Source of the DNA: Macrostomum lignano
Lineage: Eukaryota
Assembly (NCBI GenBank): GCA_002269645.1
Contig: NIVC01000619.1
Location: forward strand, 144,601-208,600
DNA length: 64,000 nucleotides
Direction of reading: 5' to 3'
Positions 6,166 to 56,988 of the stretch are shown one piece after another. Positions within the stretch are counted from its first letter, which is position 1. Every line of letters starts with the position of its first letter. A program made the translations under genes and the position numbers. The notes beneath the pieces were generated by a model that did not search any database, was not told the DNA's origin, and saw only the letters and a list, made by a program, of their open reading frames with translations.

Positions 6166-7043
<878 letters not shown>

Positions 7044-9478: not shown

Positions 9479-9661
9479 CTAACCATGAAAATGAACGTGG
9501 AAGCCCTTCTTCCTCAGCTTCGGGAACTGCTCCTCTGACATCTTGGAATCGTCGGAGTCGGACGGATCCTCCTTCGACTCGCTTTCGGCCTTGGCCTCTG
9601 AGGGTTCGACAACGACCAGGGCTGCGAGCACCAGAAGTCCGAGAACCAGTTGCCACTTCAT
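9479..9661 (-). CDS. P1: secreted His-rich prepropeptide (60 aa; mature GFHVHFH-G)
   Basis: MKWQLVLGLLVLAALVVVEPSEA signal-like segment, acidic spacer, RKK, GFHVHFHG, stop; one of 11 near-identical intact copies. Confidence 0.9.
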   Translation of the reverse strand: MKWQLVLGLLVLAALVVVEPSEAKAESESKEDPSDSDDSKMSEEQFPKLRKKGFHVHFHG

Positions 9662-11036
<1,375 letters not shown>

Positions 11037-12572: not shown

Positions 12573-12755
12573 CTAACCGTGAAAATGAACGTGGAAGCCC
12601 TTCTTCCTCAGCTTCGGGAACTGCTCCTCCGACAGCTTGGAATCGTCCGAGTCGGACGGATCCTCCTTCGACTCACTTTCGGCCTTGGCCTCCGAGGGCT
12701 GGGCGACGGCCAGGGTTGCAAGCACCAGAAGTCCGAGAACCAGTTGCCACTTCAT
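12573..12755 (-). CDS. P2: His-rich prepropeptide (GFHVHFH-G)
   Basis: Intact 60-aa ORF, signal variant VLATLAVAQ. Confidence 0.9.
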   Translation of the reverse strand: MKWQLVLGLLVLATLAVAQPSEAKAESESKEDPSDSDDSKLSEEQFPKLRKKGFHVHFHG

Positions 12756-13711: not shown

Positions 13712-14080
<369 letters not shown>

Positions 14081-15594: not shown

Positions 15595-15626
15595 ATGTCC
15601 GGTGACAACGGAAAAGTACAACAACA

Positions 15627-15690
<64 letters not shown>

Positions 15691-24175: not shown

Positions 24176-24509
24176 ACGAACAGATGATCGACGAACTAGA
24201 AGAGATTGAATTTTTATATAACCAGTTTATCGCGGAACAGCACTCGTCTGGCGACAACACTGGCTTAATCAATCCAATTAGTCGATGTAGCCCGGCCGAG
24301 TCTCTGCGTTATTCAGACGACAATATTCTAGAGGAGTCGAGTTTCTGGAGCGGCGCTCGTTCTGTCGCGTGTCAAACTGACAACATCAGACCGGGCTCTA
24401 CATCAGGTCGCATCCGTAGTTGGTCTGTATAATATTAGTTATATAACAACATTGTTAAAAAGACATATTAAATCTATATAACTACAACATAGTGAGATAA
24501 AAGGTCATA

Positions 24510-27212: not shown

Positions 27213-27395
27213 ATGAAGTGGCAACTGGTTCTCGGACTTCTGCTGTTCGCAGCCCTGGTCGTGGTCGAGCCCTCGGAGGCCAAGGCCGAAAGCGAGTCGA
27301 AGGAGGATCCGTCCGACTCGGACGATTCCAAGCTGTCGGAGGAGCAGTTCCCGAAGCTGAGGAAGAAGGGCTTCCACGTTCATTTTCATGGTTAG
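27213..27395 (+). CDS. P3: His-rich prepropeptide (GFHVHFH-G)
   Basis: Intact 60-aa ORF from the conserved ATGAAGTGG. Confidence 0.9.
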   Translation: MKWQLVLGLLLFAALVVVEPSEAKAESESKEDPSDSDDSKLSEEQFPKLRKKGFHVHFHG

Positions 27396-28059
27396 ATGAG
27401 CCACATCGCACATCGAAGTCGCTTCATCGATCGGAAGATTGACAACTCACAGCTGACCGGACTTCGAACTTTGATTTGAAACCCCCCAATTCTGAATGGT
27501 AAACTGAAATTAACACAAGCCTTTATTCGCTGAGCAGTTTTACCAAATATAACAACAAGCAGAAGCTAATTAGACACTTAATGCAACAATAATATTTGTG
27601 GTGTTGAGCTTTGTAAATTTCTTCAAGTTGCCAGTCGTCATGTGGAGGACTTTCAGATAAAAGTTTTTGTATTAAAGTAGTCAGAAAGTGTTGATGCGAT
27701 AAGGTACTCATTCGGCACATATGGATTATATATATTCGTTTTTGCCAAACTTTATTATTTGAAATAAGTTCACAACATAATCGGCGATTATGCGATTACG
27801 CGTATAAAATAACATTTCCTAACTTTTCCGTTTACTTTGTGAATTATTGTGGCGATTCTTAACTCGTCACAAACAAGTGACTAAGCAGCTAACTAACTGT
27901 AGAGTTAACAGAATTTTCTCTTCTTGTTGTGAAAAATCGGTTATCAAATGTGCGAGCTGATTTAGGAAACGTGGAGCCAATTCGATCCATAGAACTATAG
28001 TGGAGCTCGTACCCATTTTTTGAGAAATCTCCAAGAGAAAGATGTGACAACTTGATGAT

Positions 28060-28400
28060 TGATAACTTAGAGAACTAGTACTCGTATTGAAGCCCCACAC
28101 ATTGAAGTCAAAGTAGCGAGAAGGAATGTTGAGCAACTTACTGCTGCCCATTCATGGTTTCCGGATCAGGATGACGACCGGCCTTTACAACTGGCCATCG
28201 TCATCAAATTTAATAAAGCAAGTTCACAATGCTTTAAATATATTTCTAGACATTAGCTCCTTTAGCAGTGTGGAGCTTAGCCATACTGTACAAAATTTAA
28301 GTTCTGATGCGATTTTCGAGGCTATCAAGGAGACTAGACAGCAGTTCGTCCTCGTCTCAGGCCGTCGGGGTTTGTCCGGTAGGTGGGACTTGGTCGACGT
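28060..28400 (-). mobile_element. Degenerate APE-type LINE remnant
   Basis: KFDDDGQL*RPVVILIRKP* is homologous to KFDEDGHLSRPVLILIHEPWMRNG at ~51600, resembling the endonuclease (L/I)xQEPW motif; many stops. Confidence 0.35.
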
Positions 28401-29806
28401 CCATGGTCTCCTCGCCCCTCAGCCCCGACAGATTCTTCAAGCTCCGATGACGGAATGGAGGAGGTTTCTTCATCTTTATCTTTTCCCTCGGACCCCACCA
28501 AAGTAGACGAGAAAAACACGGGCTTCGAACTTTAACTTCCGAACACCCGGCTTTGTTTCCGACTCCATTTGGCAGGTTTTGCGCCCTGGGCCGGGTCACA
28601 GCTGTCGCTACGGTCGCCGAACCGCCGCTTGCAGAAGGCCAAGCACTGCATTGACTTTGGGATCGGCCTGTGCCTTTCTTTTGGCCTGTGACTCGACTCT
28701 ACCAAGCGCTGGACAGGCCGAGGGCAATTGTATCGCCCGTTTCCGCCTTCTATCCCCTTTGCGGTGATACACCGGTTTGCTAGAAGAGAGGTTACGAGCT
28801 AGAATTCAGTCACAGTAGGACCTGATGGTCAATATCTGACCCAGCGGCAGTGCTCTCGCTATCGCTGAGCACTCTCATCGGCCTAGGGTTCCCGAATCCG
28901 AACCCGAATCTCAAGTGAGTCCCAATGGACGGGCACCAAATTTTTGGGCTCATGCCTTCCATTTAGCTAGTTGTGTAATTCAAAGTCTACGGCACGAGGC
29001 CTTCACTGTTGTCCATTTACCATATGTCAGTTCACCTATAGCGCAAATGCAGTAGAGCTGCTAACAGTGGTCATCTTACAAAAAGTACAGAAAGGTCAGA
29101 TTCTTATCTAGGAACTTCAACCGGACCGCCCAAGGACACATCACACTTCCAGGTAAATAGTGCACTCACAATCTCAGAAATATTGTTTGTACATATTTAC
29201 GGTGACGAGCTAGAAATCGCCCAAAGAAAAAAAATGAACGGAAAAATTTCAAACTGCAATAAAAAATAATACAATTTTTGTAATGATACTTATTATTCGG
29301 CGAAAATGAAGGGATACCCAAAAACTTTTAAACAAGTATCTCTAAGGTAACACATTCACATTGAATTTCATGCGAAAAAAAACAATCTCTGCATCGCATC
29401 ATCATCAAATCAACATATTCAAGTCAGACTTTAGAGTCCAGTCAGCTTTGATAAAGCAACTTCGATGCACGATGTGTCAGGAAAGGATATGAGTCAATGT
29501 ATCAATGTATCAGTATCAATTGTTATCTGCAAGTTAGATATATCTACGAATGCTCCTCATGACGACTCGTAACTTAAAGAAATTTACTAAGCTCAATCTA
29601 ACATATATTATTGTTGCATTTGGTGCCTAATTAGATACTGCTTGTTGTTATATTTGGTAAAACTGATCAGCAAATAAAGATGGTATGGATTTCATGTTTA
29701 CCATTCAGAATTGGGCGGTTTCAAATCAAAGTTCACAGTCCAGTCAGCTGTGAGTTGTCTTAATCTTCCGATCGATGAAGCGACTTCGATGTGCGATGTG
29801 GCTCAT

Positions 29807-29989
29807 CTAACCATGAAAATGAACGTGGAAGCCCTTCTTCCTTAGCTTCGGGAACTGCTCCTCCGACAGCTTGGAATCATCCGAGTCGGACGGATCCTCC
29901 TTCGACTCGCTTTCGGCTTTGGCCTCCGAGGGCTCGACAACGACCAGGGCTGCGAAAACCAGAAGTCCGAGAACCAGTTGCCACTTCAT
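29807..29989 (-). CDS. P4: His-rich prepropeptide (GFHVHFH-G)
   Basis: Intact 60-aa ORF. Confidence 0.9.
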   Translation of the reverse strand: MKWQLVLGLLVFAALVVVEPSEAKAESESKEDPSDSDDSKLSEEQFPKLRKKGFHVHFHG

Positions 29990-32233
29990 GGTTGCTTGAG
30001 TCGAGTCGATTCTTCGAGTTGTGTGTAGATTGAGTCGAGTCTGAGCTTGTTGCTTTGAGCAGTCGGGAACTAATAATTTATAAACATCGGATCGGCACGT
30101 GTTTCCGTTCCGTCGAGCGGCGTTGTTTGAGCTGCAGGCTTTCACGTGAGCAGAGACAGGCGTTGCTTTAAGTGAATATCATGTAGCGTTTATTTGCTTG
30201 TTGACGCCTGAGCAATAAAAAGTGCCGCTCAAGTTTTATCAGTGCAAAAGGTAAGCATCTCACTTATCGCGCTGCACTACACTGCACTTGACTCAGTTCT
30301 ATGCGAGTATTAAAGCCCAATGACGCTAACTATCGATTGTGGAGAATAAAATGCATGAAATCGGGATGTCTACCGATTTTTTCGGCCACTGCGTGTCGAT
30401 TTCTGCAGTATCCAATGGCGGTCCTCAACCGGTCAGATGCTAAGCTTGTGTTTAGAATTCCTTAGATTTGATTTCTTAGTCTGCTCGGGAAAGCGTATTT
30501 CAGGAGCCGATTTCGTGTGGTCGAGCGAAGCAGAAAATGCGCGCCATTTGCCAGCTTATATTCTACCGTCTACCGTGTTGCTACAACTGCCGACTTTTAA
30601 TATTTGCTTTTGCAGCCGTTTTGAACCTGACTGAATGTTTCTAAACCATTGTGACGCCCCCGAGCTCTCATTAGAGAATCCATTCATTGAGGTAGAATTT
30701 AACTATTGAACTCACTGCAGTGAGCAAACCCGTTGAAGTGCTGCGAAACGGACCTAATCTGGATTTGGCTGATGATGTAGTGTATGAAAATTGATTTATT
30801 TGACAGCTTTGTAGTTAAATGGGCTAAAACTCCTATTTTTATCATAAGGTGATACGCTTGTATAATTGGTAATATCCATACTCAACAAAGGTAGCTAATT
30901 AAAAAAACTGCTACTTAAGTACTAATACTTAGGTCAAACGAGCTTTAAGTCAAGCAAAACATTTTAATCCATTCAAGAAAAAATAGTATGAGGTCGCAAG
31001 TGTATGCTTCGCCTCATGTCGATGAATAAAATCAAGAATCTCTCTGCCTAAAATTTATGTTTCCGCTCATCACAGCTCGAATCACCGTCCCGATCCGCAC
31101 AGTGATTGCAGATGGTCTTATTTCAGAAGTTAATGAAGCGTAACGGGTAAATGTATGAAAAGGGGGTCCATACACCGATCATTTGGTGAATCTCAAAATA
31201 CATCTCGTAGGTGTGCAAGCATGAATTCAAAATGATAATGCCATAAATTTACGAGTAGCTACACCTTCTTTGTATCGAATTCGAAATTCATTTGACACCA
31301 CAAATTGAAAATTTCATGAACGCATTGATGAGCATCGTAATAAATGTCTGTCTCCCAGCAGAATCGGAGAAAAATGAACGATTAGACTGACAACAAAGAT
31401 TGGAGCAGGACAGCTGAACATCTGCGTCAGAAATGCCAGAAATGAAATAGTCAAGTGTTTTCCAATCTGGACTTGTTCAAGCTTTTCAAGAGAACAGTAC
31501 GCAGTAAGCGGTTATCGACAGCCTCGACGGTGTATCAGCTCTTTAGGATAGTAAAAAAACGTTTGGTGAGATTATGGGGCTTTAGAACATTAAAGTAAAC
31601 AACCCCGTCAAAATACAATGCTTGTACTCCTTAACATTGCGAATACGAGCTATTGTTCTCTTTCTTCTTTTTTTACATGCACTGTCTCTACTGAGATTAT
31701 TCTCCAAGATGAAATGCGACAGCTTTTCCACATTAAAAGTCTCATGCATATTTAGTCCAACGAATACGTTGTTGGATTGCAACGAAAATTGACACATAGC
31801 TACAGTTTCCTGCACTGCAGATATCCCGATTTCGCACATTTCTTCTACACAGTCGAAATATAGTGTAATATTGCTTTACTATGCGACTGAGTTCGCATTA
31901 CGAGTCAAAGAGAGTGCTATGCAAAGCAGTGCAGTGCGGTGCGGTGCAGTGCTTAGAATACCTGCAGTGTCCTGCTCTAAGAAAATGCTAGAGCGGTACT
32001 TGTTTGATTGCTCAGGTGTCAACAAGCAAACAAACGCTACATGATATTCGCTTAAAGCAACGCCTGTCTCTGCTTACGCAAAAGCCTGCAATTCAAACAA
32101 CGCCGCTCGACGGAACGGAAACACGTGCCGATCCGATGCGTATAAATTCGAAGCTGCCGACTGCATAACACAACAAGCTCAGACTCGACTCAGTCTACAC
32201 ACAGCTCGAAGAATCGACTCGACTCAAGCAATC

Positions 32234-32416
32234 ATGAAGTGGCAACTGGTTCTCGGACTTCTGGTGCTCGCAGCCCTGGTCGTTGTCGAGCCCTCGGAGG
32301 CCAAGGCCGAAAGCGAGTCGAAGGAGGATCCGTCCGACTCCGACGATTCCAAGCTGTCGGAGGAGCAGTTCCCGAAACTGAGGAAGAAGGGCTTCCACGT
32401 TCATTTTCATGGTTAG
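32234..32416 (+). CDS. P5: His-rich prepropeptide (GFHVHFH-G)
   Basis: Intact 60-aa ORF. Confidence 0.9.
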   Translation: MKWQLVLGLLVLAALVVVEPSEAKAESESKEDPSDSDDSKLSEEQFPKLRKKGFHVHFHG

Positions 32417-34059
32417 ATGAGCCACATCGCACATCGAAGTCGCATCATCGATCGGAAGATTCAGACAACTCACAGCTGACCGGACTTTGAACTTTAATTT
32501 GAAACCGCCCATTCATAATGGTAAACTGAAATTAATAAAGCCCTTATTCGCTGAACAGTTTTACCAAATATAACAACAAGCAGAAGCTAATTAGACACTT
32601 AATGCAACAATAATATTTGTGTTGTTGAGCTTTGTTAATCTTTTTCCAGTTGCCAGTCATCATGCAGATAATTTGCATTAAAGTAATCAGAGAATTTTTG
32701 ATGCATGAAGAAAGAAATTCATTGAATGGAGAAATTTATTCAAATATGGATATTTATTCATTTGTGCCAATTTGAAACTACTTGAAATTCGCTCAAAACA
32801 TAATGGGCATGTCGGATTTCCATCTTCCAAATATGTTTTGCATTTCAGACTCGTACTTTTCAGTTAGCCGACTCTCTTCGTCTAACATACTCTTCCCCAA
32901 CTTCCAAGTAGGTCCCAATGGCAGGGTACCAAATTTTTGGGCTCATATCTTTCATTTCGACCTTGTGGAATTAAAAGTCTAGGGCACAGACGTCGCTACG
33001 GTCGCCGAACCGCTGCTTGCAGAAGGCCAAGCACTGCATCGACTTTGGTATCGGCCTGTGCCTTTCCTTTGGCCTGTGACTCGACTCTACCAAGCGTTGG
33101 ACAGGCCGAGGGCAATTGAATCGCCCGTTTCCGCCTTCTATCCCCTCTGGGGTGACACACCGGTTTGCTAGAAGAGAGGTTAGAATTCAGTAACAGTAGG
33201 ACCTGATGGTCAATATCTGACCCAGCGGCAGTGCTCTCGCTATCGCTGAACACTCTCATCGGCCTAGGGTTCCCGAATCCCAAGTGGGTCCCAATGGCAG
33301 GGTACCAAATTTTTGGGCTCATGCCTTCCATTTAGCTAGTTGTGAAAATTCAAAGTCTACGGCACGATGCCTTCAATGATTTCCATTTACCAGCTACCTA
33401 CTCATCTCGGTTCACCCAGCGCAAACTCAGTAAAGCCGCTAAAAGCGGTCATCTTTCAAAAAGCACGGAAAGCTCAGCTTCTCATCTAGGAGCATCAGCC
33501 GGACCGCCCAAGGACACAACACACCTTCCAAGTAAATAGTGCACTCACAATCTCAGAGATATTATGCACAAGTTATTGACTTATCGTACCCGGTAAAACT
33601 CAAAAACCCGGAAAATGAAGGTATACCCAAAAACTGCTGAACAAGTATCTCTCTAAGTTAACACATTTACGTTGAATTTAAGATTATCTTCATCGCATCA
33701 TTATTACATCATCATATTCAAGTCAGAATTTAGAGTTCAGTCTGCAACTTTGACGCACGATGCGTCATGAAAGCGACAAATTATTATCTGTACGTCGCAC
33801 ATTTATCTACCAGTCTTCAACATCACAACTTGCAAATTTAAAAAGCTCAACAACATAAATATTATAGTTGCATGGGGTTGCCTAATTAGATGGTACTAGT
33901 TGTTATATTTGTCAAAGCCGATCAGGGCACAAGGGCTGTGTAGATTTTACGTTTACTATTCGGAATTGGGCGGTTTTAAATCAAAGTTTAAAGTCCTGTC
34001 AGGTGTGAGTTGTCAATCTTCCGATCCATGATGCGACTTCGATGTGCGATGTGGCTCAT

Positions 34060-34242
34060 CTAACCATGAAAATGAACGTGGAAGCCCTTCTTCCTCAGCT
34101 TCGGGAACTGCTCCTCCGACAGCTTGGAATCGTCCGAGTCGGACGGATCCTCCTTCGACTCACTTTCGGCCTTGGCCTCTGAGGGTTCGACAACGACCAG
34201 GGCTGCGAGCACCAGAAGTCCGAGAACCAGTTGCCACTTCAT
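34060..34242 (-). CDS. P6: His-rich prepropeptide (GFHVHFH-G)
   Basis: Intact 60-aa ORF. Confidence 0.9.
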   Translation of the reverse strand: MKWQLVLGLLVLAALVVVEPSEAKAESESKEDPSDSDDSKLSEEQFPKLRKKGFHVHFHG

Positions 34243-35314
34243 GATTGTTTGAGTCGAGTCGATTCTTCGAGCTGTGCGTAGACTGAATCGAGTCTGAGCT
34301 TGTTGTATTGTGCAGTCGGCAGCCTCGAATTTATACGCATCGGATCGGCACGTGTTTCCGGTCCGTCTAGCGACGATGCTTGAGGTGAAGGCTTTCGCGA
34401 GAGCAGAGACAGGCGTTACTTTGAACGAATATCATGTAGCGTATATTTGCACGTTGACACCTGAGCAATCAAACAAGTACCGATATAGCTTTTTCTCAGT
34501 GCGAATGCATTCTACACCTTGCTCTGCACTGCACTCTATTTACTCGATATCATTAGCATAGTAATGCAACTGACACTATCTATCAACTGTAGAGAAGAAA
34601 TTCGCGAAATCGGGATTTCTACAGATCGATCGACTCGGCCACTTGTTCTCGATTTGTGCAGTTTTTAATTTTAGATCTCAACTTGTCAGATGCTATTTAC
34701 AATTTCTTAGATTTGATTCCTTACTCGACCCGGCGGAAAATGCGGAAGAACCAGACACGGGGCGAGAAATACGTGGAAGAGCGCCATTTGCAGCTTATTT
34801 TCTTACATCGCCTCGTTCCATCTACCAACGCTCAGAGCGACAACTGCCGACTTGCAACCGCTGGGTTTTCTCAAATGTCGATATCTCTTTTAAATCTATT
34901 GACTTCTTTTCAATCATTGCGACGCCATCGGATTCTCATTGAAGGAATTTTTAATGAGATAGAAAAAATGTGCTAAACAGCCGGGAAGGCGCCGTAAGGA
35001 GTAAAGTCGTTTCGATGCTGCAAGATTGACTTAATCTGGATTTTCCTGATGTACGAAGTACCGAACCTTATTGCAAACTAAATGAAAGTTATTTCCATTT
35101 ATTACTTGTAATATACGGAAGCAATATATTTATACGAGTATTCCGTTTGGCCATATTAACATTGTACATTTTAGCCATAGAGAAATGTTGATTTGATGCC
35201 TGTGTCGACTGCCTGTGTCGATAGAGAAACGACTGTGTTGGGTTTTTTTAAGAGTAAGTAGTTGTCTGTACCTCTACTAAACCTTTTCTGTGACATTTTC
35301 GAGTTATTTGCTGC

Positions 35315-35700
35315 ATGAGTGATGTTGATAGCGTCAGCTTTGAATCACTTAGGCTTGCTGAAGTCGAAGCTGTCTTAAGTGACTTGCCATTGGCACCCGC
35401 AACCGACTATCCGAGTTTGAGCAAGCGCGATCTCAACTACGTTCTTAAGTGTTTTATCTTAGAGATCCGAAATTAACCTGGTAATCGCTATGGCGCTTCT
35501 ACGTTTAAGGATTGTTTTCAGCATGCTGCAATGCTACTTTTTCAATTAATGCGGAAAGCCATGGAGCCTCTGGATGGATGGGGAATTCAATGAGAGCCGA
35601 CGTCCGAAGAGAAACTCTGGTCTGAAGGTGTGATTGGTAGTGATGTCCACGACAACTGGTGAGTTCTGTGATTTGGGGGGTGGTCGATGTGGAGTTGTGC
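35315..35700 (+). mobile_element. Degenerate Crypton-like (DUF3504) tyrosine-recombinase transposon remnant
   Basis: LSKRDLNYVLKCFILEIRN*PGNRY and SEEKLWSEGVIGSD match the DUF3504 patterns LNYxLxxFxLEIR and EExLWxxGVxG; stop and frameshifts present. Confidence 0.55.
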
Positions 35701-37281
35701 GGGGTGATTATCTACTTTGATTGAGTTGATCTGTTACAACCCATTGACTCACTTCTAACTGTACAAGCCAAAAAAACTGGTTAACAACTGCTTACCTTTC
35801 TAAAACATTATAATATAACTTTTCAACTTCGGATTCGTCAAAAGTGAGCTCAAATTGGTCAGCGTATGCAAAGCCATATAGCGCTCAAGGGGAAGAGAAT
35901 GAGTGTCTATGGTAAATTTCTAGAGAAAGTGACTTCGAATTCGTCTAAATAAGTGAAATTCGTCAGTGCAAATACAGCCTGATCAGAAAAAGTGTTTGCT
36001 TTGTCCATGGTAAGAAAAGGTGTCTATGGTAAATTTAGTAAGAAAGTGAGTGAAGTTCGTCTGTGGAAACGTAGCCCAATTTCTTAAAATCTTCATTTCA
36101 TGCTTTGATTTCATGCTTTGATTGTTGTCAGAGTATTTCAGACTCCTCTGTGTCAGAGCATCAAAGCATAGTATGTGTTGCTTTTGCATGTATTTCTTGA
36201 GTACTTTCTTGTGGCGCATTCGTTTGTCTTATTTATTTGGATCGTTTGTTTGGCCGGGACAAATAAATGTCTTTTACATTGCACCATAGACCTTTTCGGC
36301 GCGGCCAAAAGGGTATAAATCGATCTCACTTTCATCTGAGCTACCTGGCTAAGTTGGCAAGTGACTACTAAATAAACTTCACTGATGTCAAAACAATTGT
36401 TAAAATGTGTATTGCTCTTGATTTGCCAGCAGAAATCAGAGGTACCGGAGGAATTTCTTTTTTAAAGAAGCCTGGAAGATAAGGGTTGAAGCTTTATTGT
36501 TTATATGCTACCGAGCAATAAAGCGATGCAATGTTTTGCTACGCAAGCAAAAAAGGCCCATGGCCGAAAAGTAAAGGCATAATGATTCTGTCGTGTAGAA
36601 ACGAGCATCCATAGACTTCAATGTACCACTAAACTTAAAAAACTGAGTTCACAGGCACTCGATATATATGAGAAAGGAGTCCTACATCGATAATATGATG
36701 CATCTCGAAAGTAATCCACGATAGATATCAAGCTTCGAGACGAGGAGACAGGCAGCAAACGTATGGCGTTTAAGCAAAACCATGATCGAAAGAGCTATCG
36801 TTTCTTTAAACCAAAATCGTGTAGATTATCCTGGTATGGAAGATGACAAGAGAAAAATAACTACGACTCGCAGCGGACAGAAAAAAACGATCTTTTCTTT
36901 CGATCTTAACCGATTTCATACATTTAATCTCCCACTGTCGATAGATAGTGTCATTCGGCTTTACGATGAAACTGATTAAAGGTAAATGCAGGGCAGTACA
37001 GTGCAGTGCAGTGCGGTGCGTAGGATTAATTTTCACTGAGAAAACGTTGGGCGGTACTTGTTTGATTGCTCGGGTGTCAAGAAGCAAACAAACGCTACAT
37101 GATATTCGCATAAAGCAACGCCTGTCTCTGCCAATGCAAAAGCCTTCATTCAACTCAAACAACGCACTACAACGGACCGGTGGTCAACGGTCCGGAAACA
37201 CGTGCCGATCCGATGCGCATATATTAACAGCTGCCGACTGCTCAACACAACAAGCTCAGACTCGACTCGACTCAAGCAACC

Positions 37282-37473
37282 ATGAAGTGGCAACTGGTTC
37301 TCGGACTTCTGCTGTTCGCAGCCCTGGCCGTCGCCGAGCCTTCCCAGGAGGAGAACGACAAGGGCCAAAGTGATTCGAAGGATGATCGGACCGACATGGA
37401 CGTTTCCGACCTGTCGGATGAGCAGTTCCCGAAGCTCAGGAAGAAATTCCACCTTCATTTACCTGGTAAATAA
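37282..37473 (+). CDS. P7: divergent paralog, 63-aa prepropeptide (mature FHLHLP-GK)
   Basis: Same signal peptide and promoter, diverged acidic spacer, ...QFPKLRKK FHLHLPGK*. Confidence 0.88.
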   Translation: MKWQLVLGLLLFAALAVAEPSQEENDKGQSDSKDDRTDMDVSDLSDEQFPKLRKKFHLHLPGK

Positions 37474-38228
37474 GCAACATCGTACATCGAAATCGCTTCA
37501 AGAATCGGAAGATTATGACAACTCACAGCTGACCGGACTTTGATCTCTGACTCGGAACCACCCAATTCTGAATGGTAAACTTGAAATCTACTCGGCTCTT
37601 ATTCGCTGATCAGTTTTATTATCTGACAAATACAACAGCATCGTCTAATTAGGCACCCAGTACAACGATTAGATTTTTGTTGTTAAGCTGCGTAAATTTC
37701 TTTGTAAGTCGGAAGTCATAATGGGGAGAAATTTAAAATACATTTAATTTCAATTAATGATCTTAAAATATGACAGAAAAATAGCTGTTTCGAAGGAGCG
37801 ACTTCTCCAAAGGCGGCTGCTGCTCGCAAAGACTGGCCGCTTGTCCGCCCGGCGTGAATTTCCCCAAATTGACCTGCGTTCTACAGGTTCGCATGTTTCA
37901 TAGTGTGCTGGTGGGTGGCTTGTAAAAGTAGCTGCTCTTAAATTAAGAGTAGTTTCGGAGTCAAATTGTGGTGGATGAGACCTATATGCGCGTCAATATG
38001 GTCAGCCAATGTCGTTTTTTCTGTGCCTTGTTGCACTGTACGGATATTTTCGCCCGCATTAAATAGAAGCATTTACTGCTCGTTATTCCAAATATTACAA
38101 TAGACATTTGGATTCAAAACATTCAGCACCAGGTGTATTTGTTAATACGAACTTAGCTAAAGAACACCAAAAAGTAAATGAACAAAAAAGAAACAATCAA
38201 TAAAAACTTAACTACACTCTTAACTAAC

Positions 38229-39458
<1,230 letters not shown>

Positions 39459-39923
39459 GGCATAAAGATACAGCAGATAGATATATACTTTTCTATCTGA
39501 GTTCTTAGCTGAGTTTCGAGTGCCTAGAGTTAATTTTTGCACTAGACAATTGGGCAAATGAATTTTGATACAGAGTTCCGTCAGCCTCAATAAAGTGACT
39601 TCGATATACGATTTGTCATGAAAGCGACTAAAAAGTATCTGAATGAAGATGCATTTACAAGTCCTTTACTTCACGGCTCGCAACTTGAAGATATTTACAA
39701 AGCCCAACAAAACAAACAGTATAGTTTCTTTGCGAGCCTATTTATTTGGTACTTGTTGGTATATTTAATAAAACTCGCCAGTGAATAAACACTGAGTACA
39801 CTACACCTCAACCATTTAGAAATTGGGGGGGGGGTTAGAGTCAGAGTTCAGAGTCCGGTCGGTGGGAGTTGTGAGTGCGAGTCCCTTAATCTTCGATAAA
39901 GCGACTTCGATGTACGATTTTGT

Positions 39924-40114
39924 TTATTTACCAGGTAAATGAAAGTGGAACTTCTTCTTGAGCTTCGGGAACTGCTCATCCGGCTTCCCGGAAGCGTCCA
40001 TCTCGGAGGATCATCCTTCGACTCACGTTCGCCCTTGTCGTCCTCCTCCTGGGAAGGCTCGGCGACGGTCAGGGCTGCGAACAGCAGAAGTCCAAGGGCG
40101 AGCTGCCACTTTAT
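39924..40114 (-). pseudogene. P8: pseudogene of the P7-type paralog (would encode FHFHLP-GK)
   Basis: ATG changed to ATA; 1-nt deletion (191 nt vs 192 nt in P7) after KDD; TATA/E-box segment deleted upstream. Confidence 0.85.
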
Positions 40115-41224
40115 GTTCGCTTGAGTCGAGTCAAGCCTGAGCTTGTTGTTTGTCTCTTTATTTTTCATAAAAGCCAAATGACGCTATCGATCGACTGTGG
40201 AGAAAAAATGCGCGAAATCGGGATATCTAAAGTACAGACTGTTGCACCATGGCCATTACCATGAATTCTCACTTTTAGACAACCCTCCATTAGTAAAGTT
40301 TATTTAGTCCCTTTGTAGCTTAGCCAGATCCCTCAGAGGTAAGTGAGATGATTTGGTCTACGATATGGTTTGGTATATCCAGATTATGTCCATCTCGCAG
40401 CACCCCAACAAGTTTACACACTACAATGAGTTCATGACTGTTTAGCACAAATTTGTTCTATTTAATCCAATGGTGAAAGCCCAGTGGTGTCGCAATTATT
40501 TAAAAGTGATCTGAAAGATTAAGTTCTGACAGGTTGTTGTCGGAAAACGGTGGCAAGTCGGCAGTTGTCGCTCTTAGAGTTGGTAGATGGAACGAGGCGA
40601 TGTAAGAATATAAGCTGCATTTGGCGCGCTACCACGCATTTACCGCGCATTACCACGCACTACCACGCATTACCACGCATTTTCTGGTTCTTCCGCATTT
40701 TCTGCCGGGTCGAGTAAGGAATCAAATCTAAGAAATTGTAAATAGCATCTGACAAGTTGAGATCTTCAATTGGAAACTGCACTAATCGACAACAAGTCGC
40801 CGAGTCAACGATCTGTACAAATTCTGATTTCGCGAATTTATTCTCTACAGTTGATAGATAGTGTCAGTTGCATTTACTATGCTAATGATGTGGAGTAAAT
40901 ACAGTGCAGTGTAGAGCGGTGCATAGGATACATTCTCACTGAGAACACGCTAAAGCGGTACTCGTTTGATTGCTAGGGTGTCAATCTATCTATCTATCTA
41001 TCTGAAGCAAATATACGCTTCATGGTATTCGTTCAAAGCAACGCCTGTCTTTGAGGTAAAGAAAGCCTTTACCTCAAACATCGTCGCTAGACGGACCGGA
41101 AACACGTGCCGATCCGATGCGTATAAATTCGAGGCTGCCGACTGCACAATACAACAAGCTCAGACTCGACTCAGTCTACGCACAGCTCGAAGAATCAAAG
41201 CAACTCGACTCGACTCAAGCAATC

Positions 41225-41407
41225 ATGAAGTGGCAACTGGTTCTCGGACTTCTATTGTTCGCAGCTCTGGCCGTCGCCCAGCCCTCGGAGGCCAAAGCCG
41301 AAAGTGAGTCGAAGGAGGATCCGTCCGACTCGGACGATTCCAAGCTGTCGGAGGAGCAGTTCCCGAAGCTGAGGAAGAAGGGCTTCCACGTTCATTTTCA
41401 TGGTTAG
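41225..41407 (+). CDS. P9: His-rich prepropeptide (GFHVHFH-G)
   Basis: Intact 60-aa ORF. Confidence 0.9.
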   Translation: MKWQLVLGLLLFAALAVAQPSEAKAESESKEDPSDSDDSKLSEEQFPKLRKKGFHVHFHG

Positions 41408-43879
41408 ATAAGCCACATCGCACATCGAAGTCGCTTCATGAATCGGAAGATTAAGACAAGTCACAGCTGACGGACTTTAAACATTGATTTGAAACCGCCC
41501 AATTCTGAATGGTAAACGTAAAATTAACACAAGCCCTTATTCGCTTATCAGTTTTACCAAATATAACAACAAGCAGTATCTAATTTGGCACCCAATGCAA
41601 TTATAATATTTGTATTGCTGAGCTTTGTGAATTTATTTATGCGAAGGACTTGTAGATACATCTACATGCATATAATGATATTTTTCATGAAACTCGGCGA
41701 AACTGTGCTGGTTAAATATTATAGCTTAGAACTCTTGATTAATGTATTCCTTTCTGCCGAATTTTTAATTTAGGATAAGTTCACGAAATAATAGGCGAAC
41801 GACATTTTTTAAATGGTCATTTTCTTTTTTGGGGCGATTTGTAACTCGTCACCAATATGTGACTAAATATGGTATGCTGTAACTAACTTCAGAGTTGACA
41901 GAATGTTCTCTTGTTCTGCGGCTTGGTTAATCATTACCTACCAAATTTGCTAGCCGATTTATGAAACCTTCGATGTATGAAGCCATCATGGAATAGGGTT
42001 CGTTTCATAAGAAAATTTTAAGTGACAAGTGAATATTTGATGAGTGGCTGCTGTCGTTATATCATGCAAGAACCCTTTCTGCAGAACTAATGTATCTTTT
42101 TATGTCTTTGGCTGGAATGACCTTTCTGTTAATTCGACGCAAAAGTAATTAGAGCTCACTTAAAAAAAGTAAATAAAATAGGAAGAGCTGAAGAGCTCTA
42201 AAGTACGTAGTGCGCACATTGCAAAAAAAATGAAGTCAGAACTTTTTGAAGCAATATTGTCTAACAACTTTGCAAGCCTAGAAGCCAGCTTTGTATCTAA
42301 TCCATGTATTGCCAATCGCATCGACACACACTTGCCTGCACCTCGCAGCAAGTACATTGAAGATCCTTGAACCCAACTTATAACAGTCGCGTTGCAAGAC
42401 GAACTCTGCATCCAGTTCACCTGCACGATCATCAGTGGATTCCAATAAAGTAGCGGGTCCTCCCAAAACAGTTAGGGTTGTTTTACGAAGACGGCTGGTC
42501 TGCCGGATAGTGCGGCGCAAGTCGTCGGCCAGACAAATCGACGGACTGAGGGAGCAGTAGGTATCGAGAAACTGGAAGCTTCTAGCAACCTGCCATGCGG
42601 TCTAGATAGATTCGAGGTGGCAGTAGCCTTCTACAACTGGGACTCAGTTGGAAAAGCACAAGTAACGCTAATGCGACTTTCATTAAAGTGTAATGACTAA
42701 TGATTAATTTGTGGCTGAGGTAGAGGCTTTCTCATTCTTAGTCGCAACAGATTATGAATAACGCTTCTAAGCTTGACGGCCTTGCGAAAATTAAGGTTGG
42801 AGTTTTCAAATACGGCTCAGTGAGAACAAAAAATCGGAATAAGAATACAAGACTTAAGAACTTTCAGTGTGGTTCGATGCGCGACAAATTTCCTGTCTAG
42901 TGATGGAAGAAACTTGCCGAGATTTTGGGAAGCTGTACCACTTCCAGAAAGTGTGCCGGTCACAGAGCGGCCGTTTAAAGCCAAGAAGGCGCCAATCATC
43001 ATTAAATTTCTCGAATTCCACTAGAAGCCCAAGTGCAAGTTGAGAACCGGCCAACGGGACGTTCCTCATTGGCACTATAGAAAGCACTTCACCTATAAAC
43101 TTCACGTTGAACTTCGTCTATAAGGAGAAAACTAAAGCATTTGAGTGCCAGGTCGACACAGGTGAAGCTGTGTCAGCCACGTCAAATTGCTCATGGCTTG
43201 AGATCGGATGTCAAAAATTGCAACAGAATGAGACCAAGCAGCTGAGCTATGTTGACTCGCATTCATTTCAAAACCTAGAACGATTCAATGGCACTGTGTC
43301 TCATGAGGACTGCCATTTTATACTCGTAATTGTACAATCGCTCATTACGATTTCCTAAGCTTATTTCAAATTGTGAAATTCGGTGAAAGGAAAAAAATGA
43401 CCAATAAGTACTCAACCAGTTTCTTCGCATTAACACGTTCCCTGTGACGATTAACCGGCAGACTCGAAATTAACTGACATAGACAAATACAGCATAGGCG
43501 AATTTTTTAGCGGTAGCACTTGATGATAGTAGCGAATGATGCGGGCGGTGGCTGCAGTTCTCATTTATTGTAACCGTATAAGTGGATAGTTAGGGCTCGT
43601 TATTATCAATTCCGTCTGGGTAGTTAATAGAGATGGGCCGGAGTATTTGCTGAATCCGTAAGGAGTGCACTGGGCGGCTACACAACAAGATAGATGATAG
43701 ATGATTTTTTATTTTTCTATTAGAGGCAGGGGGGTTGTGTGCACCCTGGCGCACTTTAAGCGTCATAGGCACACAACCGGCGAGAGGCATTACTGCCCAT
43801 TCCGCCGACTCCCCTGAGCAGGCATACAAGCGCGCGGATACGTACGCAGGCACACACTCACACAGGAGTGTACAGCGGC

Positions 43880-44067
43880 CCTAACTTTATATTATCGTTA
43901 GGCATGTACACTTCACTGCGCCTTGGGGGTTGGCTCTCAAGGCCGTTAATTGCACGAGCAGAGCCAAGCCGAGATTCCAATTCAGCCCCAAATTAATGTG
44001 GCTTCACTTGGAATCGAGCCTGGGTCGCTGGCACACTAGAGCAGCTGCGCTACCGCTGGGCTACGGC
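43880..44067 (-). mobile_element. tRNA-derived SINE
   Basis: Head 44067-43999 has A box TAGCCCAGCGG and B box GGCTCGATTCC, but no complete cloverleaf. Confidence 0.5.
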
Positions 44068-44976
44068 CCCCCTGATGATAGATGATAGAGCGAGTCGATG
44101 AGCCTGAGGCAAAGGCGACGATGTGATAACAGTGATCGTGTGGTTGCGGTGCTCGTAGCGAGAACCCTTTATAGACGGTAGTGGTGGCCTGGTCGAGAAT
44201 TGACGGTGGCGGTGGCGTGACTGAGACTTGGCAGAGGCGTGCTTTAGAACTGTGGCGGAGCGAGGCGGAGAGAGAAGACGGGTAAACAAGCAACGAGGGC
44301 TGTGAAAAACAAGGGTCGCAAAACAAGGGGCTACCCCGGGCGCCCCAGCCAGACAGGACTGATAAAGAGCGGGCTGGGGGTGGGTGCGCGGGGAGAGCTT
44401 AATTTCCGGCTAGCATAATTTATGCGCGGCTTTTCTATTGGCCGGCGAGAAAAACCAACTTGAAAACAGAAATTATCGATCGCATTGTACATAGGCTTTA
44501 CAAACGCACGCATTTTTGTTTAAAATTCTTTGGGCATTACTTTAAGCAGACGTTAGAGTACGAGACCATTAAATAACCAATATTATAGATTGGCACTGCT
44601 CTCGCTAAAACAGCCCTTGTCGGGGCTACCTCAACTGACAACGTCACATTCCCCAATGCTAAAAAGTTTTTGCTAAATTTCATACGACAAATGTTTATCG
44701 GCATCAAGATGCATCTACAACGTCTCCACATGACGACTCACAAATTAAAAAAAATACAATGCCAAACAACACAGGCATTATAGTTGCATTGGGTGTCTAA
44801 TTAATTCTTTCTGGTTGTTATATTTGGTAAAACTGATCAGTGAATAAGTATTGCGTAGATTTCACGTTTTCCATTCAGAATTGGGCGGTTCCGAGTCAAT
44901 TTGCAAAGTCCGGTCAGCTGTGAGTTGTCTTAATCTTCCGATCGATGATGCGACTTCGATGTGCGATGTGGCTCAT

Positions 44977-45159
44977 CTAACCATGAAAATGAACGTGGAA
45001 GCCCTTCTTCCTCAGCTTCGGGAACTGCTCCTCCGACAGCTTGGAATCGTCCGAGTCGGACGGATCCTCCTTCGACTCGCTTTCGGCCTTGGCCTCCGAG
45101 GGCTCGACAACGACCAGGGCTGCGAAAAGCAGAAGTCCGAGAACCAGTTGCCACTTCAT
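44977..45159 (-). CDS. P10: His-rich prepropeptide (GFHVHFH-G)
   Basis: Intact 60-aa ORF. Confidence 0.9.
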   Translation of the reverse strand: MKWQLVLGLLLFAALVVVEPSEAKAESESKEDPSDSDDSKLSEEQFPKLRKKGFHVHFHG

Positions 45160-46509: not shown

Positions 46510-46572
46510 ATGTCGGAGGAGCAGTTCCCGAAGCTGAGGAAGAAGGGCTTCCACGTTCATTTTCATGGTTAG
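46510..46572 (+). pseudogene. P11: 5'-deleted copy (MSEEQFPKLRKKGFHVHFHG*); promoter and signal peptide lost
   Basis: The upstream module is joined directly to AGATGTCGGAGGAG; the 3' flank matches P12. Confidence 0.85.
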
Positions 46573-47461: not shown

Positions 47462-47774
47462 TAAGACAAGTCACAGCTGACCGGACTTAAAACTCTGACT
47501 CGGAACTGCCCAATTATAAACGACAAACGTAATATTTGCCCGTATTTGCTGATTAATTTTAAGAAATATAACAACCAGAACAGTATATTAGCTACCCAAT
47601 GAAGCTATAATCTTTGTGTTTTTGAGCTTTGCTAATTTCTTCGAGTTGCGATTCATTTGGAGATTTTTTATACAAATTTACTTACGGATAACGTTTGGTC
47701 GCTTTCATGAGATATTGTGCATCAAATTCCATTTATCGAAGCTCACTGGACTCTGCAATCTAACAGATAGATGC

Positions 47775-50063: not shown

Positions 50064-50246
50064 ATGAAGTGGCAACTGGTTCTCGGACTTCTGGTGCTCG
50101 CAGCCCTGGTCGTTGTCGAGCCCTCGGAGGCCAAGGCCGAAAGTGAGTCAAAGGAAGATCCGTCCGACTCGGACGATTCCAAGATGTCGGAGGAGCAGTT
50201 CCCGAAGCTGAGGAAGAAGGGCTTCCACGTTCATTTTCATGGTTAG
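50064..50246 (+). CDS. P12: His-rich prepropeptide (GFHVHFH-G)
   Basis: Intact 60-aa ORF, KM spacer variant. Confidence 0.9.
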   Translation: MKWQLVLGLLVLAALVVVEPSEAKAESESKEDPSDSDDSKMSEEQFPKLRKKGFHVHFHG

Positions 50247-50593: not shown

Positions 50594-51245
<652 letters not shown>

Positions 51246-52152: not shown

Positions 52153-52335
52153 CTAACCATGAAAATGAACGTGGAAGCCCTTCTTCCTCAGCTTCGGGAA
52201 CTGCTCCTCCGACAGCTTGGAATCGTCCGAGTCGGACGGATCCTCCTTCGACTCACTTTCGGCTTTGGCCTCCGAGGGCTCGACAACGACCAGGGCTGCG
52301 AGCACAAGAAGTCCGAGAACCAGTTGCCACTTCAT
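52153..52335 (-). CDS. P13: His-rich prepropeptide (GFHVHFH-G)
   Basis: Intact 60-aa ORF. Confidence 0.9.
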   Translation of the reverse strand: MKWQLVLGLLVLAALVVVEPSEAKAESESKEDPSDSDDSKLSEEQFPKLRKKGFHVHFHG

Positions 52336-56805: not shown

Positions 56806-56988
56806 ATGAAGTGGCAACTGGTTCTCGGACTTCTGCTATTCGCAGCCCTGGCCGTCGCCCAGCCCTCGGAGGCCAAGGCCGAAAGTGAGTCGAAGGAGGA
56901 TCCATCCGACTCGGACGATTCCAAGCTGTCGGAGGAGCAGTTCCCGAAGCTGAGGAAGAAGGGCTTCCACGTTCATTTTCATGGTTAG
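56806..56988 (+). CDS. P14: His-rich prepropeptide (GFHVHFH-G)
   Basis: Intact 60-aa ORF. Confidence 0.9.
   Translation: MKWQLVLGLLLFAALAVAQPSEAKAESESKEDPSDSDDSKLSEEQFPKLRKKGFHVHFHG

What the first reader, a model, noticed from the sequence alone, without database searches (positions are those of the whole stretch)
37444..37473. Alternating F-H-V-H-F-H pattern resembles designed self-assembling catalytic amyloids
Seen: all three variants (GFHVHFH, FHLHLP, FHFHLP) keep hydrophobic-His-hydrophobic-His-hydrophobic. In a beta strand this puts all His on one face and all hydrophobic residues on the other. Established: designed heptapeptides such as Ac-IHIHIQI-NH2 form Zn-binding, esterase-active fibrils, and His-rich proteins harden invertebrate biomaterials through metal cross-links. 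Inference: this could be a natural pH- or metal-triggered fibril or gel former, which would explain why many gene copies are needed for bulk material.
Basis: inference. Interest (0 to 1): 0.7.

Follow-up and report, generated by a model that had tools for sequence, protein, structure and literature searches.

The report
Flatworm histidine-rich amidated secreted peptide genes
The flagged bases are the tail of one of twelve clustered genes in the flatworm Macrostomum lignano; each most likely yields a six- or seven-residue amidated peptide of alternating hydrophobic and histidine residues, an undescribed family built like animal antimicrobial-peptide families.

Summary
Window 37444-37473 encodes K-FHLHLPGK-stop, the end of a 63-aa ORF (37282-37473). 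Eleven intact 60-aa paralogues end in KLRKK-GFHVHFHG-stop. FHFHLP comes from a pseudogene.

The window is Macrostomum lignano contig NIVC01000619.1:144601-208600. Each gene has a signal peptide, an acidic propeptide, a conserved KK site, a short peptide and a terminal Gly or Gly-Lys. The predicted products are GFHVHFH-NH2 and FHLHLP-NH2.

The copies are under purifying selection: pN/pS is 0.03 in the propeptide and 0 in the peptide. All twelve share a TATA/E-box promoter module.

A profile search found relatives, all but one annotated M. lignano proteins. They carry other tails on the same cassette:
- FIHIHF
- Arg/hydrophobic alternating 8-10-mers such as IFRVRVRI
- long polycationic peptides

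This is the logic of host-defence peptide families: conserved prepro region, hypervariable cationic tail.

My best reading is a secreted amphipathic beta-strand peptide, with the His branch gated by pH or metal. Arg in the relatives argues against metal catalysis as the family's shared function. A neuropeptide role or self-assembly is not excluded.

No expression site or activity data were found, and no paper describes the family.

The parts
37282..37473 (+). Intact 63-aa prepropeptide gene containing the finding. Signal peptide is about 37282-37335. Acidic propeptide is 37336-37440. KK site is 37441-37446. FHLHLP is 37447-37464. The Gly amide donor is 37465-37467, Lys 37468-37470, stop 37471-37473.
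   Evidence: identical or near-identical annotated M. lignano proteins P0006 and P0024
37194..37225 (+). Core promoter module of the 37282 gene, GGAAACACGTGCCGATCCGATGCGCATATATT (E-box CACGTG plus a TATA-like box). The same module sits upstream of every intact copy.
   Evidence: 12 matches against 0 expected, one per intact gene; also shared with Arg-type paralogues elsewhere on the contig
9479..9661 (-). Intact 60-aa paralogue ending KLRKK-GFHVHFHG-stop
12573..12755 (-). Intact 60-aa paralogue, GFHVHFHG
27213..27395 (+). Intact 60-aa paralogue, GFHVHFHG
29807..29989 (-). Intact 60-aa paralogue, GFHVHFHG. It lies within annotated gene model P0001, which was used to place the window on the contig.
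32234..32416 (+). Intact 60-aa paralogue, GFHVHFHG
34060..34242 (-). Intact 60-aa paralogue, GFHVHFHG
39924..40114 (-). Pseudogene copy of the FHLHLP type. It has ATA instead of ATG and a 1-bp deletion that shifts the frame, and there is no promoter module upstream. The shifted frame still reads KLKKK-FHFHLPGK-stop.
41225..41407 (+). Intact 60-aa paralogue, GFHVHFHG. A (CTAT)n insertion lies in its upstream region.
44977..45159 (-). Intact 60-aa paralogue, GFHVHFHG
46510..46572 (+). Truncated 3' fragment (codons 41-60, MSEEQFPKLRKKGFHVHFHG-stop) with no 5' half and no promoter. Similarity to the 3'UTR resumes at 47462-47639.
50064..50246 (+). Intact 60-aa paralogue, GFHVHFHG
52153..52335 (-). 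Intact 60-aa paralogue, GFHVHFHG
56806..56988 (+). Intact 60-aa paralogue, GFHVHFHG

Best explanation
The finding is the 3' end of a small, intronless gene of the flatworm Macrostomum lignano. It is one of 12 intact tandem paralogues in this window. Each encodes a 60-63-aa secreted prepropeptide.

Shown from sequence:
- a hydrophobic signal peptide (MKWQLVLGLLLFAALAVA)
- an acidic propeptide (net charge -8 to -9 before the basic site)
- an invariant Lys-Lys site
- a 6-7-residue tail
- a terminal Gly or Gly-Lys

Inferred from the standard secretory-peptide pathway:
1. Signal peptidase removes the signal peptide.
2. A proprotein convertase cuts after KK.
3. A carboxypeptidase trims the basic residues.
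4. The amidating enzymes convert the terminal Gly to an amide.
5. The products are GFHVHFH-NH2 ([M+H]+ 879.44) and FHLHLP-NH2 ([M+H]+ 762.44).

These genes are the His-substituted branch of a superfamily seen almost only in M. lignano. The superfamily hangs hypervariable tails on the same signal/propeptide/promoter cassette. The tails are mostly strongly cationic: Arg/hydrophobic alternating 8-10-mers, a 33-mer rich in Pro and Arg, and amphipathic 18-29-mers.

The most likely function (inferred) is a secreted host-defence or otherwise membrane-active amphipathic beta-strand peptide, with the anionic propiece neutralising it during export. The His branch would be nearly uncharged at seawater pH and cationic at acidic pH. 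With His at position 2 or 3 from a free N-terminus, it could also bind Cu(II) or Zn(II), so its activity would be gated by pH or metal. The high copy number would serve dosage.
For: Architecture and copies.

Organism and annotation: the proteins are annotated only as hypothetical proteins of M. lignano. The window equals NIVC01000619.1:144601-208600. The Mlig_3_7 gene set was built from RNA-seq transcripts (PMC5730564), so the models imply transcription.

Real genes:
- Among the 11 GFHVHFH copies, pS is 0.07-0.15 while pN/pS is 0.034 in the propeptide and 0 in the site plus peptide. The signal peptide is at 0.47.
- A 32-nt E-box/TATA module precedes exactly the 12 intact genes, against 0 expected by chance.

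Superfamily:
- Profile searches of 1.84 and 5.8 billion proteins returned relatives that are all annotated M. lignano proteins, apart from one contig from a public sequencing run of unknown species.
- They share the same signal peptide, acidic propiece and KK site, with tails FIHIHF, FVRVHVRF, IFRVRVHI, IFRVRVRI, FVRVRARIRL, WLRVRARVRI and long polycationic peptides.
- 17 of 19 distinct tails end in G or GK.
- Arg types lie on the same contig and share the promoter.
- R<->H is a single CGT<->CAT step.
- Between Arg-type paralogues, pN is 0.016 in the signal peptide, 0.075 in the propeptide and 0.31 in the mature part.

Beta-strand amphipathicity.

Precedents:
- Designed alternating cationic/hydrophobic peptides of 6-11 residues fold into beta strands on membranes and are antimicrobial. 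Natural linear ones are rare (PMC8757834).
- Mass spectrometry in a planarian shows that flatworms process prohormones with convertases and amidate them (PMC2953531).
Against: - No expression site, peptide detection or activity data were found.
- The His peptides carry little charge at neutral or seawater pH. At 6-7 residues they sit at the lower length limit for membrane activity of alternating peptides. Val-containing designs were weak.
- There is no detectable homology to any known antimicrobial family. Pfam gives only a sub-threshold Defensin_propep hit (E 0.068, below cut-off), which reflects composition.
- The invariance of GFHVHFH across 11 copies looks more like a constrained ligand than an arms-race peptide.
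- No signal-peptide predictor was run.
- I did not check whether M. lignano has the amidating enzymes.
Confidence: 0.5

Rival explanations
1. Neuropeptide, hormone or pheromone. The amidated 6-7-mers are receptor ligands made by neurons or endocrine-like cells, and the gene array is a by-product of the highly duplicated M. lignano genome.
For: - The architecture is exactly prohormone-like: a short peptide flanked by KK and Gly, with or without Lys.
- The mature sequence is invariant across 11 copies despite pS of about 0.1.
- Flatworm neuropeptides are typically 4-10-residue amides, validated by mass spectrometry (PMC2953531).
- From memory and untested: Arg-type relatives end in -VRI-NH2, -VRL-NH2 or -VRF-NH2, resembling flatworm NPP-1 I/L-amides and RFamides.
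- The assembly is known to be highly redundant.
Against: - The same cassette carries 18-33-residue polycationic tails that do not look like neuropeptides.
- There are at least 12 intact single-peptide genes in 64 kb, plus arrays on at least 3 other contigs. Neuropeptide dosage is usually raised by repeats within one precursor.
- The tail is hypervariable between subfamilies.
Confidence: 0.2
2. One reading: the His peptides are natural self-assembling beta-sheet fibril or gel formers triggered by pH or metal. They would be soluble in acidic granules and assemble on release into seawater at about pH 8, or with Zn/Cu, possibly with catalytic or metal-sequestering activity.
For: - The hydrophobic/His alternation is strict and the C-terminus is predicted to be amidated.
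- The cores are near-identical to designed fibril formers Ac-LHLHLRL-NH2, Ac-IHVHLQI-NH2 and FHFHF-dopa-F.
- High gene dosage.
- The direction of the pH switch fits secretion from acidic granules into alkaline seawater (inference).
Against: - Arg-type paralogues keep the alternation without metal ligands, so metal catalysis is not the shared function of the family.
- The free charged N-terminus, the shifted register and the terminal Pro differ from the designs.
- No structural or material context is known.
- Nothing here tests assembly.
Confidence: 0.12
3. Another secretory role in a specialised gland, for example a seminal-fluid allohormone, a pharyngeal or gut secretion, or a deterrent or toxin against prey or predators. 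The cassette would simply be a lineage-specific export module.
For: - The family is taxonomically restricted, rapidly diversifying and multi-copy. This is typical of reproductive and venom-like secretions as well as immune ones.
- In a planarian, several prohormone genes are expressed in reproductive glands.
Against: The gene identifiers tried were not found in the held supplementary tables of the M. lignano germline/neoblast, ageing, three-species RNA-seq, ploidy or intestine studies. The one match was an unrelated PRPF19 gene sharing an identifier prefix. This is weak evidence, because the files are partial and use several identifier systems.
Confidence: 0.1
4. The conserved acidic, Ser-rich propeptide is the functional product, and the short His tail is only a sorting or neutralising appendage.
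For: The propeptide is under strong purifying selection within the GFHVHFH subfamily (pN/pS 0.034). It is rich in S-x-E/D motifs.
Against: - The propeptide diverges between subfamilies, whereas the KK site, the alternation and the terminal Gly are retained.
- A recombinant gene, P0013, combines the GFHVHFH-type propeptide with the FHLHLPGK tail.
Confidence: 0.05

Closest known systems
Host-defence peptide gene families with a conserved prepro cassette and a hypervariable tail (frog dermaseptin superfamily, cathelicidins, Hydra arminins); named from general knowledge
   Same: - Conserved signal peptide, anionic propiece, basic cleavage site, then a highly variable and mostly cationic C-terminal peptide, often with a Gly amide donor.
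- Clustered multigene families restricted to one lineage.
- One cassette can export very different peptides.
   Different: - No sequence homology was detected.
- Many tails here are only 6-10 residues and form linear beta strands rather than helices or hairpins.
- The His branch is not cationic at neutral pH.
- Antimicrobial activity is untested.
Designed amphipathic beta-strand [XZ]n antimicrobial peptides, e.g. [IR]4, [RW]3 (review PMC8757834)
   Same: - Strict alternation of hydrophobic and basic residues.
- Length of 6-10 residues, which is the range the review reports as active. The C-terminal amide here is predicted from the terminal Gly.
- IFRVRVRI, FVRVRVRL and FVRLRVRI are essentially natural versions.
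   Different: - These are genetically encoded and processed from precursors.
- The window's own peptides use His instead of Arg or Lys.
- Val-rich designs were reported to be weakly active.
Designed catalytic amyloid heptapeptides (Ac-IHIHIQI-NH2, Ac-LHLHLRL-NH2, Ac-IHVHLQI-NH2, FHFHF-dopa-F; review PMC12995857)
   Same: - Alternating hydrophobic/His core (HLHL, HVH and FHFH are shared literally).
- 6-7 residues with a C-terminal amide.
- His residues at i and i+2 on one face, as used for Zn/Cu binding.
   Different: - The natural peptides would have a free rather than acetylated N-terminus.
- Hydrophobic residues sit at 2, 4 and 6 (GFHVHFH), or the peptide ends in Pro (FHLHLP).
- Fibril formation, metal binding and catalysis are all untested.
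N-terminal Cu(II)/Ni(II) motifs: ATCUN (NH2-X-X-His) and NH2-X-His, as in several His-bearing antimicrobial peptides (from general knowledge)
   Same: After the predicted KK cleavage, GFH- and FIH- are ATCUN motifs and FH- is an X-His motif.
   Different: This depends on the predicted cleavage point. Arg-type relatives lack the motif. Binding was not measured.
Flatworm neuropeptide precursors (planarian prohormones, PMC2953531; NPP-1 I/L-amides, from memory)
   Same: - Signal peptide, basic cleavage sites, Gly-directed amidation and short amide products.
- Arg-type relatives end in -VR[IL]-NH2, like the NPP-1 peptides.
   Different: - One peptide per precursor but dozens of genes.
- The cassette also carries long polycationic tails.
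- No homology to known neuropeptide precursors was tested, because the key papers and sequences are not held.

Membership tests
Prohormone-type amidated peptide precursor | N-terminal signal peptide | tested here: met
   There is a Met-Lys start, a 13-residue hydrophobic core and an A-V-A motif before E/Q-P-S. This was judged by eye. No predictor was available.
Prohormone-type amidated peptide precursor | Conserved basic cleavage site directly flanking the peptide | tested here: met
   KK is invariant immediately before (G)FH in all window copies and in variants KLEKK, MLKKK and KLKKK. It is retained in nearly all distant relatives.
Prohormone-type amidated peptide precursor | C-terminal Gly (with or without basic residues) as amide donor | tested here: met
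   Tails end G-stop or GK-stop. 17 of 19 distinct family tails end this way despite unrelated tail sequences.
Prohormone-type amidated peptide precursor | Mature peptide detected, and processing enzymes present in the species | not testable with these tools
   This needs peptidomics. Convertase processing and amidation are shown for a planarian, not for M. lignano here.
Host-defence peptide family with conserved prepro region and hypervariable tail | Conserved signal and anionic propiece with a hypervariable mature domain | tested here: met
   The signal peptide is nearly invariant across the superfamily. pN is 0.016 in the signal, 0.075 in the propeptide and 0.31 in the mature part among Arg-type paralogues.
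Host-defence peptide family with conserved prepro region and hypervariable tail | Cationic amphipathic mature peptide | tested here: inconclusive
   This is met for relatives, with charges of +2 to +14 and a high beta or alpha hydrophobic moment. The window's His peptides have no Arg or Lys and would be cationic only below about pH 6.
Host-defence peptide family with conserved prepro region and hypervariable tail | Antimicrobial activity, or expression at barrier tissues or on infection | not testable with these tools
   No data were found in the literature or in held supplements.
Known antimicrobial-peptide families by homology (defensin, cathelicidin, etc.) | Significant match to the family profile | tested here: not met
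   Pfam gives only sub-threshold hits: Defensin_propep at E 0.068 and 13.9 bits against a cut-off of 23.6, and DUF4576 at E 0.082.
Designed catalytic amyloid heptapeptides | Alternating hydrophobic/His beta-strand pattern in a 7-mer with hydrophobic residues at 1, 3, 5 and 7 | tested here: inconclusive
   The alternation is met. The register and length differ: G-F-H-V-H-F-H, and a hexamer ending in Pro (compare).
Designed catalytic amyloid heptapeptides | Fibril formation and Zn/Cu-dependent catalysis | not testable with these tools
   This needs synthetic peptides tested by ThT, CD, TEM and ester hydrolysis.
His-rich structural or metal-cross-linked biomaterial proteins | Large protein with His-rich domains incorporated into a material | tested here: not met
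   The whole precursor is 60-63 aa, and the His motif is a single 6-7-residue tail after a cleavage site.
Flatworm NPP-1 I/L-amide neuropeptides | C-terminal FVR[IL]-amide and a homologous precursor | not tested
   The resemblance of the Arg-type tails (-RVRI, -RVRL) is recalled from memory. The describing papers are not held. The window's His peptides lack the motif.

The most novel reading that the evidence does not exclude
M. lignano makes genetically encoded, amidated ultrashort peptides (GFHVHFH-NH2, FHLHLP-NH2, FIHIHF-NH2). They would be natural counterparts of the designed hydrophobic/His catalytic amyloids, evolved from Arg-type beta-strand defence peptides by Arg-to-His substitution. 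They would be stored soluble in acidic granules next to an anionic propiece. On release into alkaline seawater, or on binding Zn/Cu, they would self-assemble into functional fibrils or films that are metal-binding, catalytic or antimicrobial.
Probability: 0.12. Interest if true: 0.85.

Novelty: new variant of a known kind. Interest (0 to 1): 0.6.

Why it matters
Flatworm immunity effectors are almost unknown, and I found no paper describing this family.

If the reading is right, M. lignano carries a large superfamily, so far seen almost only in this species, of ultrashort linear beta-strand peptides. The review literature calls this class rare in nature but has studied it heavily as a design.

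The family also contains a built-in natural experiment: Arg and His versions on the same scaffold. The His versions almost copy peptides designed in the laboratory as Zn/Cu-binding catalytic fibrils.

The peptides are 6-10 residues long, so every hypothesis can be tested cheaply with synthetic material. M. lignano has transgenesis and RNAi, and the roughly 300-bp shared promoter is a ready-made reporter for the producing cell type.

Tried and rejected
- Bacterial-style reading of the window: rejected. Composition, microsatellites, retroelements and protein hits show a flatworm genome.
- Full-text searches for the peptide strings and for 12 gene identifiers: no paper.
- Searches for Macrostomum with histidine-rich, neuropeptide or antimicrobial peptide: nothing on this family.
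- Supplement searches for gene identifiers in six M. lignano papers (genome, germline/neoblast, ageing, three-species RNA-seq, ploidy, intestine): no hits. The one exception was an unrelated PRPF19 gene sharing the Mlig024774 prefix.
- Pfam: no family.
- The two papers on flatworm NPP-1 I/L-amides are not held, so that comparison rests on memory.
- Considered and rejected: a repeat domain of a large His-rich structural protein. The ORFs are complete at 60-63 aa with their own promoters.
- Considered and rejected: chance ORFs in a repeat. The synonymous/nonsynonymous pattern and the transcript-based annotation argue against it.
- Structure prediction and fold search were not used. A 6-7-residue product and a low-complexity propeptide would give no meaningful model.

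Full report
**What is at the coordinates.** Window 37444-37473 (+) is the last ten codons, K-F-H-L-H-L-P-G-K-stop, of a 63-aa ORF at 37282-37473: MKWQLVLGLLLFAALAVAEPSQEENDKGQSDSKDDRTDMDVSDLSDEQFPKLRKKFHLHLPGK.

A tblastn and blastn search of the window against itself finds 13 further copies:
- Eleven are intact 60-aa ORFs ending ...EEQFPKLRKK-GFHVHFHG-stop.
- One, at 39924-40114 (-), has ATA for ATG, a 1-bp frameshift and no promoter. It is a pseudogene, and it is the only source of the FHFHLP variant.
- One, at 46510-46572, is a 3' fragment.

The three variants are paralogues of one small gene, not independent occurrences.

**Is the pattern more than chance?** A six-frame scan for hydrophobic-His-hydrophobic-His-hydrophobic gives 16 hits, 14 of them in these genes, against 3.3 +/- 1.7 in shuffles.

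- The window is contig NIVC01000619.1, bases 144601-208600.
- That annotation was built from RNA-seq transcripts (PMC5730564), so the gene models imply transcription.
- Further arrays of the same genes lie on at least three other contigs. This fits the known redundancy of the assembly.
- Between the copies lie retroelements, a piggyBac-like transposase remnant and kilobase-long (CTAT)n microsatellites.

**Are they real genes?** The unit conserved between copies runs from about -250 to +430 relative to the ATG.
- A 32-nt module, GGAAACACGTGCCGATCCGATGCGYATAWATT (E-box plus TATA box), occurs 12 times in the window against 0 expected. It sits once in front of each intact gene, and is absent from the pseudogene and the fragment.
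- Most transcript-derived models start 15-60 nt upstream of the ATG. That fits initiation about 30 nt downstream of the TATA box.
- Among the 11 GFHVHFH copies, synonymous divergence is 0.07-0.15. pN/pS is 0.47 in the signal peptide, 0.034 in the propeptide and 0 in the KLRKK-GFHVHFHG segment.
- Flanking non-coding DNA is two to six times more diverged than the CDS.

These are expressed, selected genes.

**Anatomy and predicted processing.** Each precursor has five parts:
- a signal peptide
- an acidic, Ser/Asp/Glu-rich propeptide, net charge -8 to -9 before the basic site
- an invariant Lys-Lys
- a 6-7-residue tail
- Gly-stop or Gly-Lys-stop

KK is kept even where the neighbouring Arg changes, as in KLEKK, MLKKK and KLKKK. 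This is the canonical layout of a peptide released by a proprotein convertase and amidated through a C-terminal Gly. Mass spectrometry has validated that pathway for flatworm prohormones in a planarian (PMC2953531). The predicted products are GFHVHFH-NH2 and FHLHLP-NH2, with masses given. The processing itself is inferred, not shown.

**The wider family changes the interpretation.** I ran a profile of the precursors against 1.84 billion representative proteins, and a second profile search against 5.8 billion clusters. Both returned only M. lignano proteins, apart from one contig from a public sequencing run (SRR31628392, species unknown).

All relatives share the MK/RWQ-LGLLL signal peptide, an acidic propiece and the KK site. 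Their tails differ:
- FIHIHF
- FVRVHVRF, IFRVHVRF, IFRVRVHI, IFRVRVRI, IFRVRARIHI, FVRLRVRI, FVRVRVRL, FVRVRARIRL, FIRARVRVRL, WLRVRARVRI
- longer polycationic peptides: an 18-mer, a 29-mer, a 33-mer of repeated V/L-R-x-P-R units, a 24-mer starting with five Arg, a 24-mer with two Cys, and a 26-mer rich in Arg and aromatic residues

Other points about the family:
- Seventeen of 19 distinct tails end in Gly or Gly-Lys.
- Arg-type genes lie 100-125 kb upstream on the same contig and carry the same promoter module and 5'UTR.
- Arg and His interchange by single CGT<->CAT transitions in homologous codons.
- Between Arg-type paralogues, nonsynonymous divergence is 0.016 in the signal peptide, 0.075 in the propeptide and 0.31 in the tail.
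- In all the short tails the hydrophobic/basic alternation is maximal or nearly so. The pooled score is 85 against 51 +/- 4.5 in shuffles. The hydrophobic moment is far larger for a beta strand than for a helix.

**Best explanation.** A conserved export cassette carrying a hypervariable, mostly cationic, usually amidated tail, in a clustered lineage-specific multigene family, is the organisation of animal host-defence peptide families. Examples from general knowledge are the frog dermaseptin superfamily, cathelicidins and Hydra arminins.

The Arg-type 8-10-mers are natural versions of the designed alternating cationic/hydrophobic beta-strand antimicrobials. Those are active at 6-11 residues, and the review notes they are rare in nature (PMC8757834).

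The window's genes are the His branch of this family. I infer that they give secreted amphipathic beta-strand peptides whose charge, and hence activity, switches on below about pH 6 or on metal binding. After KK cleavage, GFH- and FIH- are NH2-X-X-His (ATCUN) motifs and FH- is an NH2-X-His motif. Both are established high-affinity Cu(II) sites (general knowledge, untested here).

I put about 0.8 on the precursor and processing model, and about 0.5 on the whole statement including a defence-type function.

**Rivals.**
- *Neuropeptide or hormone (0.2).* The architecture fits equally well, the tail is invariant across 11 copies, and Arg-type tails end like flatworm I/L-amides and RFamides. That last point is from memory, because the papers are not held. 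Against it are the polycationic relatives on the same cassette and the unusual route to dosage through dozens of single-peptide genes.
However, the Arg-bearing relatives show that metal ligation is not the property conserved across the family. The termini and register differ from the designs, and nothing indicates a bulk material.
- *Other gland secretions (0.1).*
- *A functional propeptide (0.05).*

**Comparison and novelty.** There is no homology to any curated family. I found no paper on these genes or peptides, and no expression information in six sets of supplementary tables.

By design logic the family belongs with known host-defence peptide families. The ultrashort linear beta-strand tails, and especially the His-for-Arg branch, are a new variant. 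Its function is untested.

The decisive experiments are simple:
- mass spectrometry for the predicted amides
- localisation of the producing cells, using the shared promoter or an in situ probe
- assays of synthetic peptides for membrane and antimicrobial activity, assembly and metal binding as a function of pH

Noticed in passing
window 27213-45159: The copies alternate in orientation (+,-,+,-,+,-,+,-) with 1.1-3.6 kb spacers, forming convergent and divergent pairs rather than a head-to-tail array. This suggests repeated inverted duplication.
   Followed up: partly
L001 6313-6495; protein P0013: A recombinant paralogue joins the GFHVHFH-type propeptide to the FHLHLPGK tail. This indicates gene conversion or unequal exchange between the two subfamilies.
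   Followed up: partly
window, about -250 to -90 of each intact gene (e.g. 37060-37230): Besides the E-box/TATA module there are conserved upstream blocks: ACTYGTTTGATTG and AAGCAAAYAAACGCTACATGATATTCG, the latter with a forkhead-like RYAAAYA core. They are shared with Arg-type paralogues and are candidate cell-type enhancers.
   Followed up: partly
window 37336-37440 and the equivalent propeptides: The acidic propeptide is rich in S-x-E/D motifs (possible secretory-pathway phosphorylation sites). It is under strong purifying selection within the GFHVHFH subfamily (pN/pS 0.034).
   Followed up: partly
window 20236-24145 (+): A non-LTR retrotransposon with endonuclease, reverse transcriptase and zf-RVT ORFs in a GC-rich (0.6) block. 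The frames are split, so it is probably degenerate.
   Followed up: partly
window 54249-55346 (-): A piggyBac-like DDE_Tnp_1_7 transposase split into two ORFs, so a decayed copy.
   Followed up: partly
window 58000-61500: A GC-rich block with a weak reverse-transcriptase match (59259-59756) and a 384-aa ORF with no Pfam hit (60301-61455). It is possibly another retroelement.
   Followed up: partly
window 6166-7043, 38229-39457, 50594-51244; also 10619-11040, 13712-14079: Very long, near-perfect (CTAT)n/(AGAT)n and (CTA)n microsatellites, up to 1.2 kb, lie between the gene copies. A short (CTAT)n run is inserted in the upstream region of the 41225 copy.
   Followed up: no
window 15544-16527 and 24010-24432: A poly-Gln/acidic 327-aa ORF with no Pfam hit. 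A similar C-terminal motif (ESSF...RSVACQ.D..RP) recurs just after the retrotransposon. It may be a duplicated or interrupted gene.
   Followed up: no
protein P0047 (UniRef A0A1I8G6Q8): A 73-aa family member is labelled 'SERPIN domain-containing protein' in UniRef. The label does not fit the sequence and looks like an annotation artefact of an older gene set.
   Followed up: no
L002 (Logan SRR31628392 contig, 541-813): The only non-NCBI relative carries a 33-residue tail rich in Pro and Arg, and a diverged version of the promoter module. Its species of origin is unknown. It could be another Macrostomum species or another line.
   Followed up: partly
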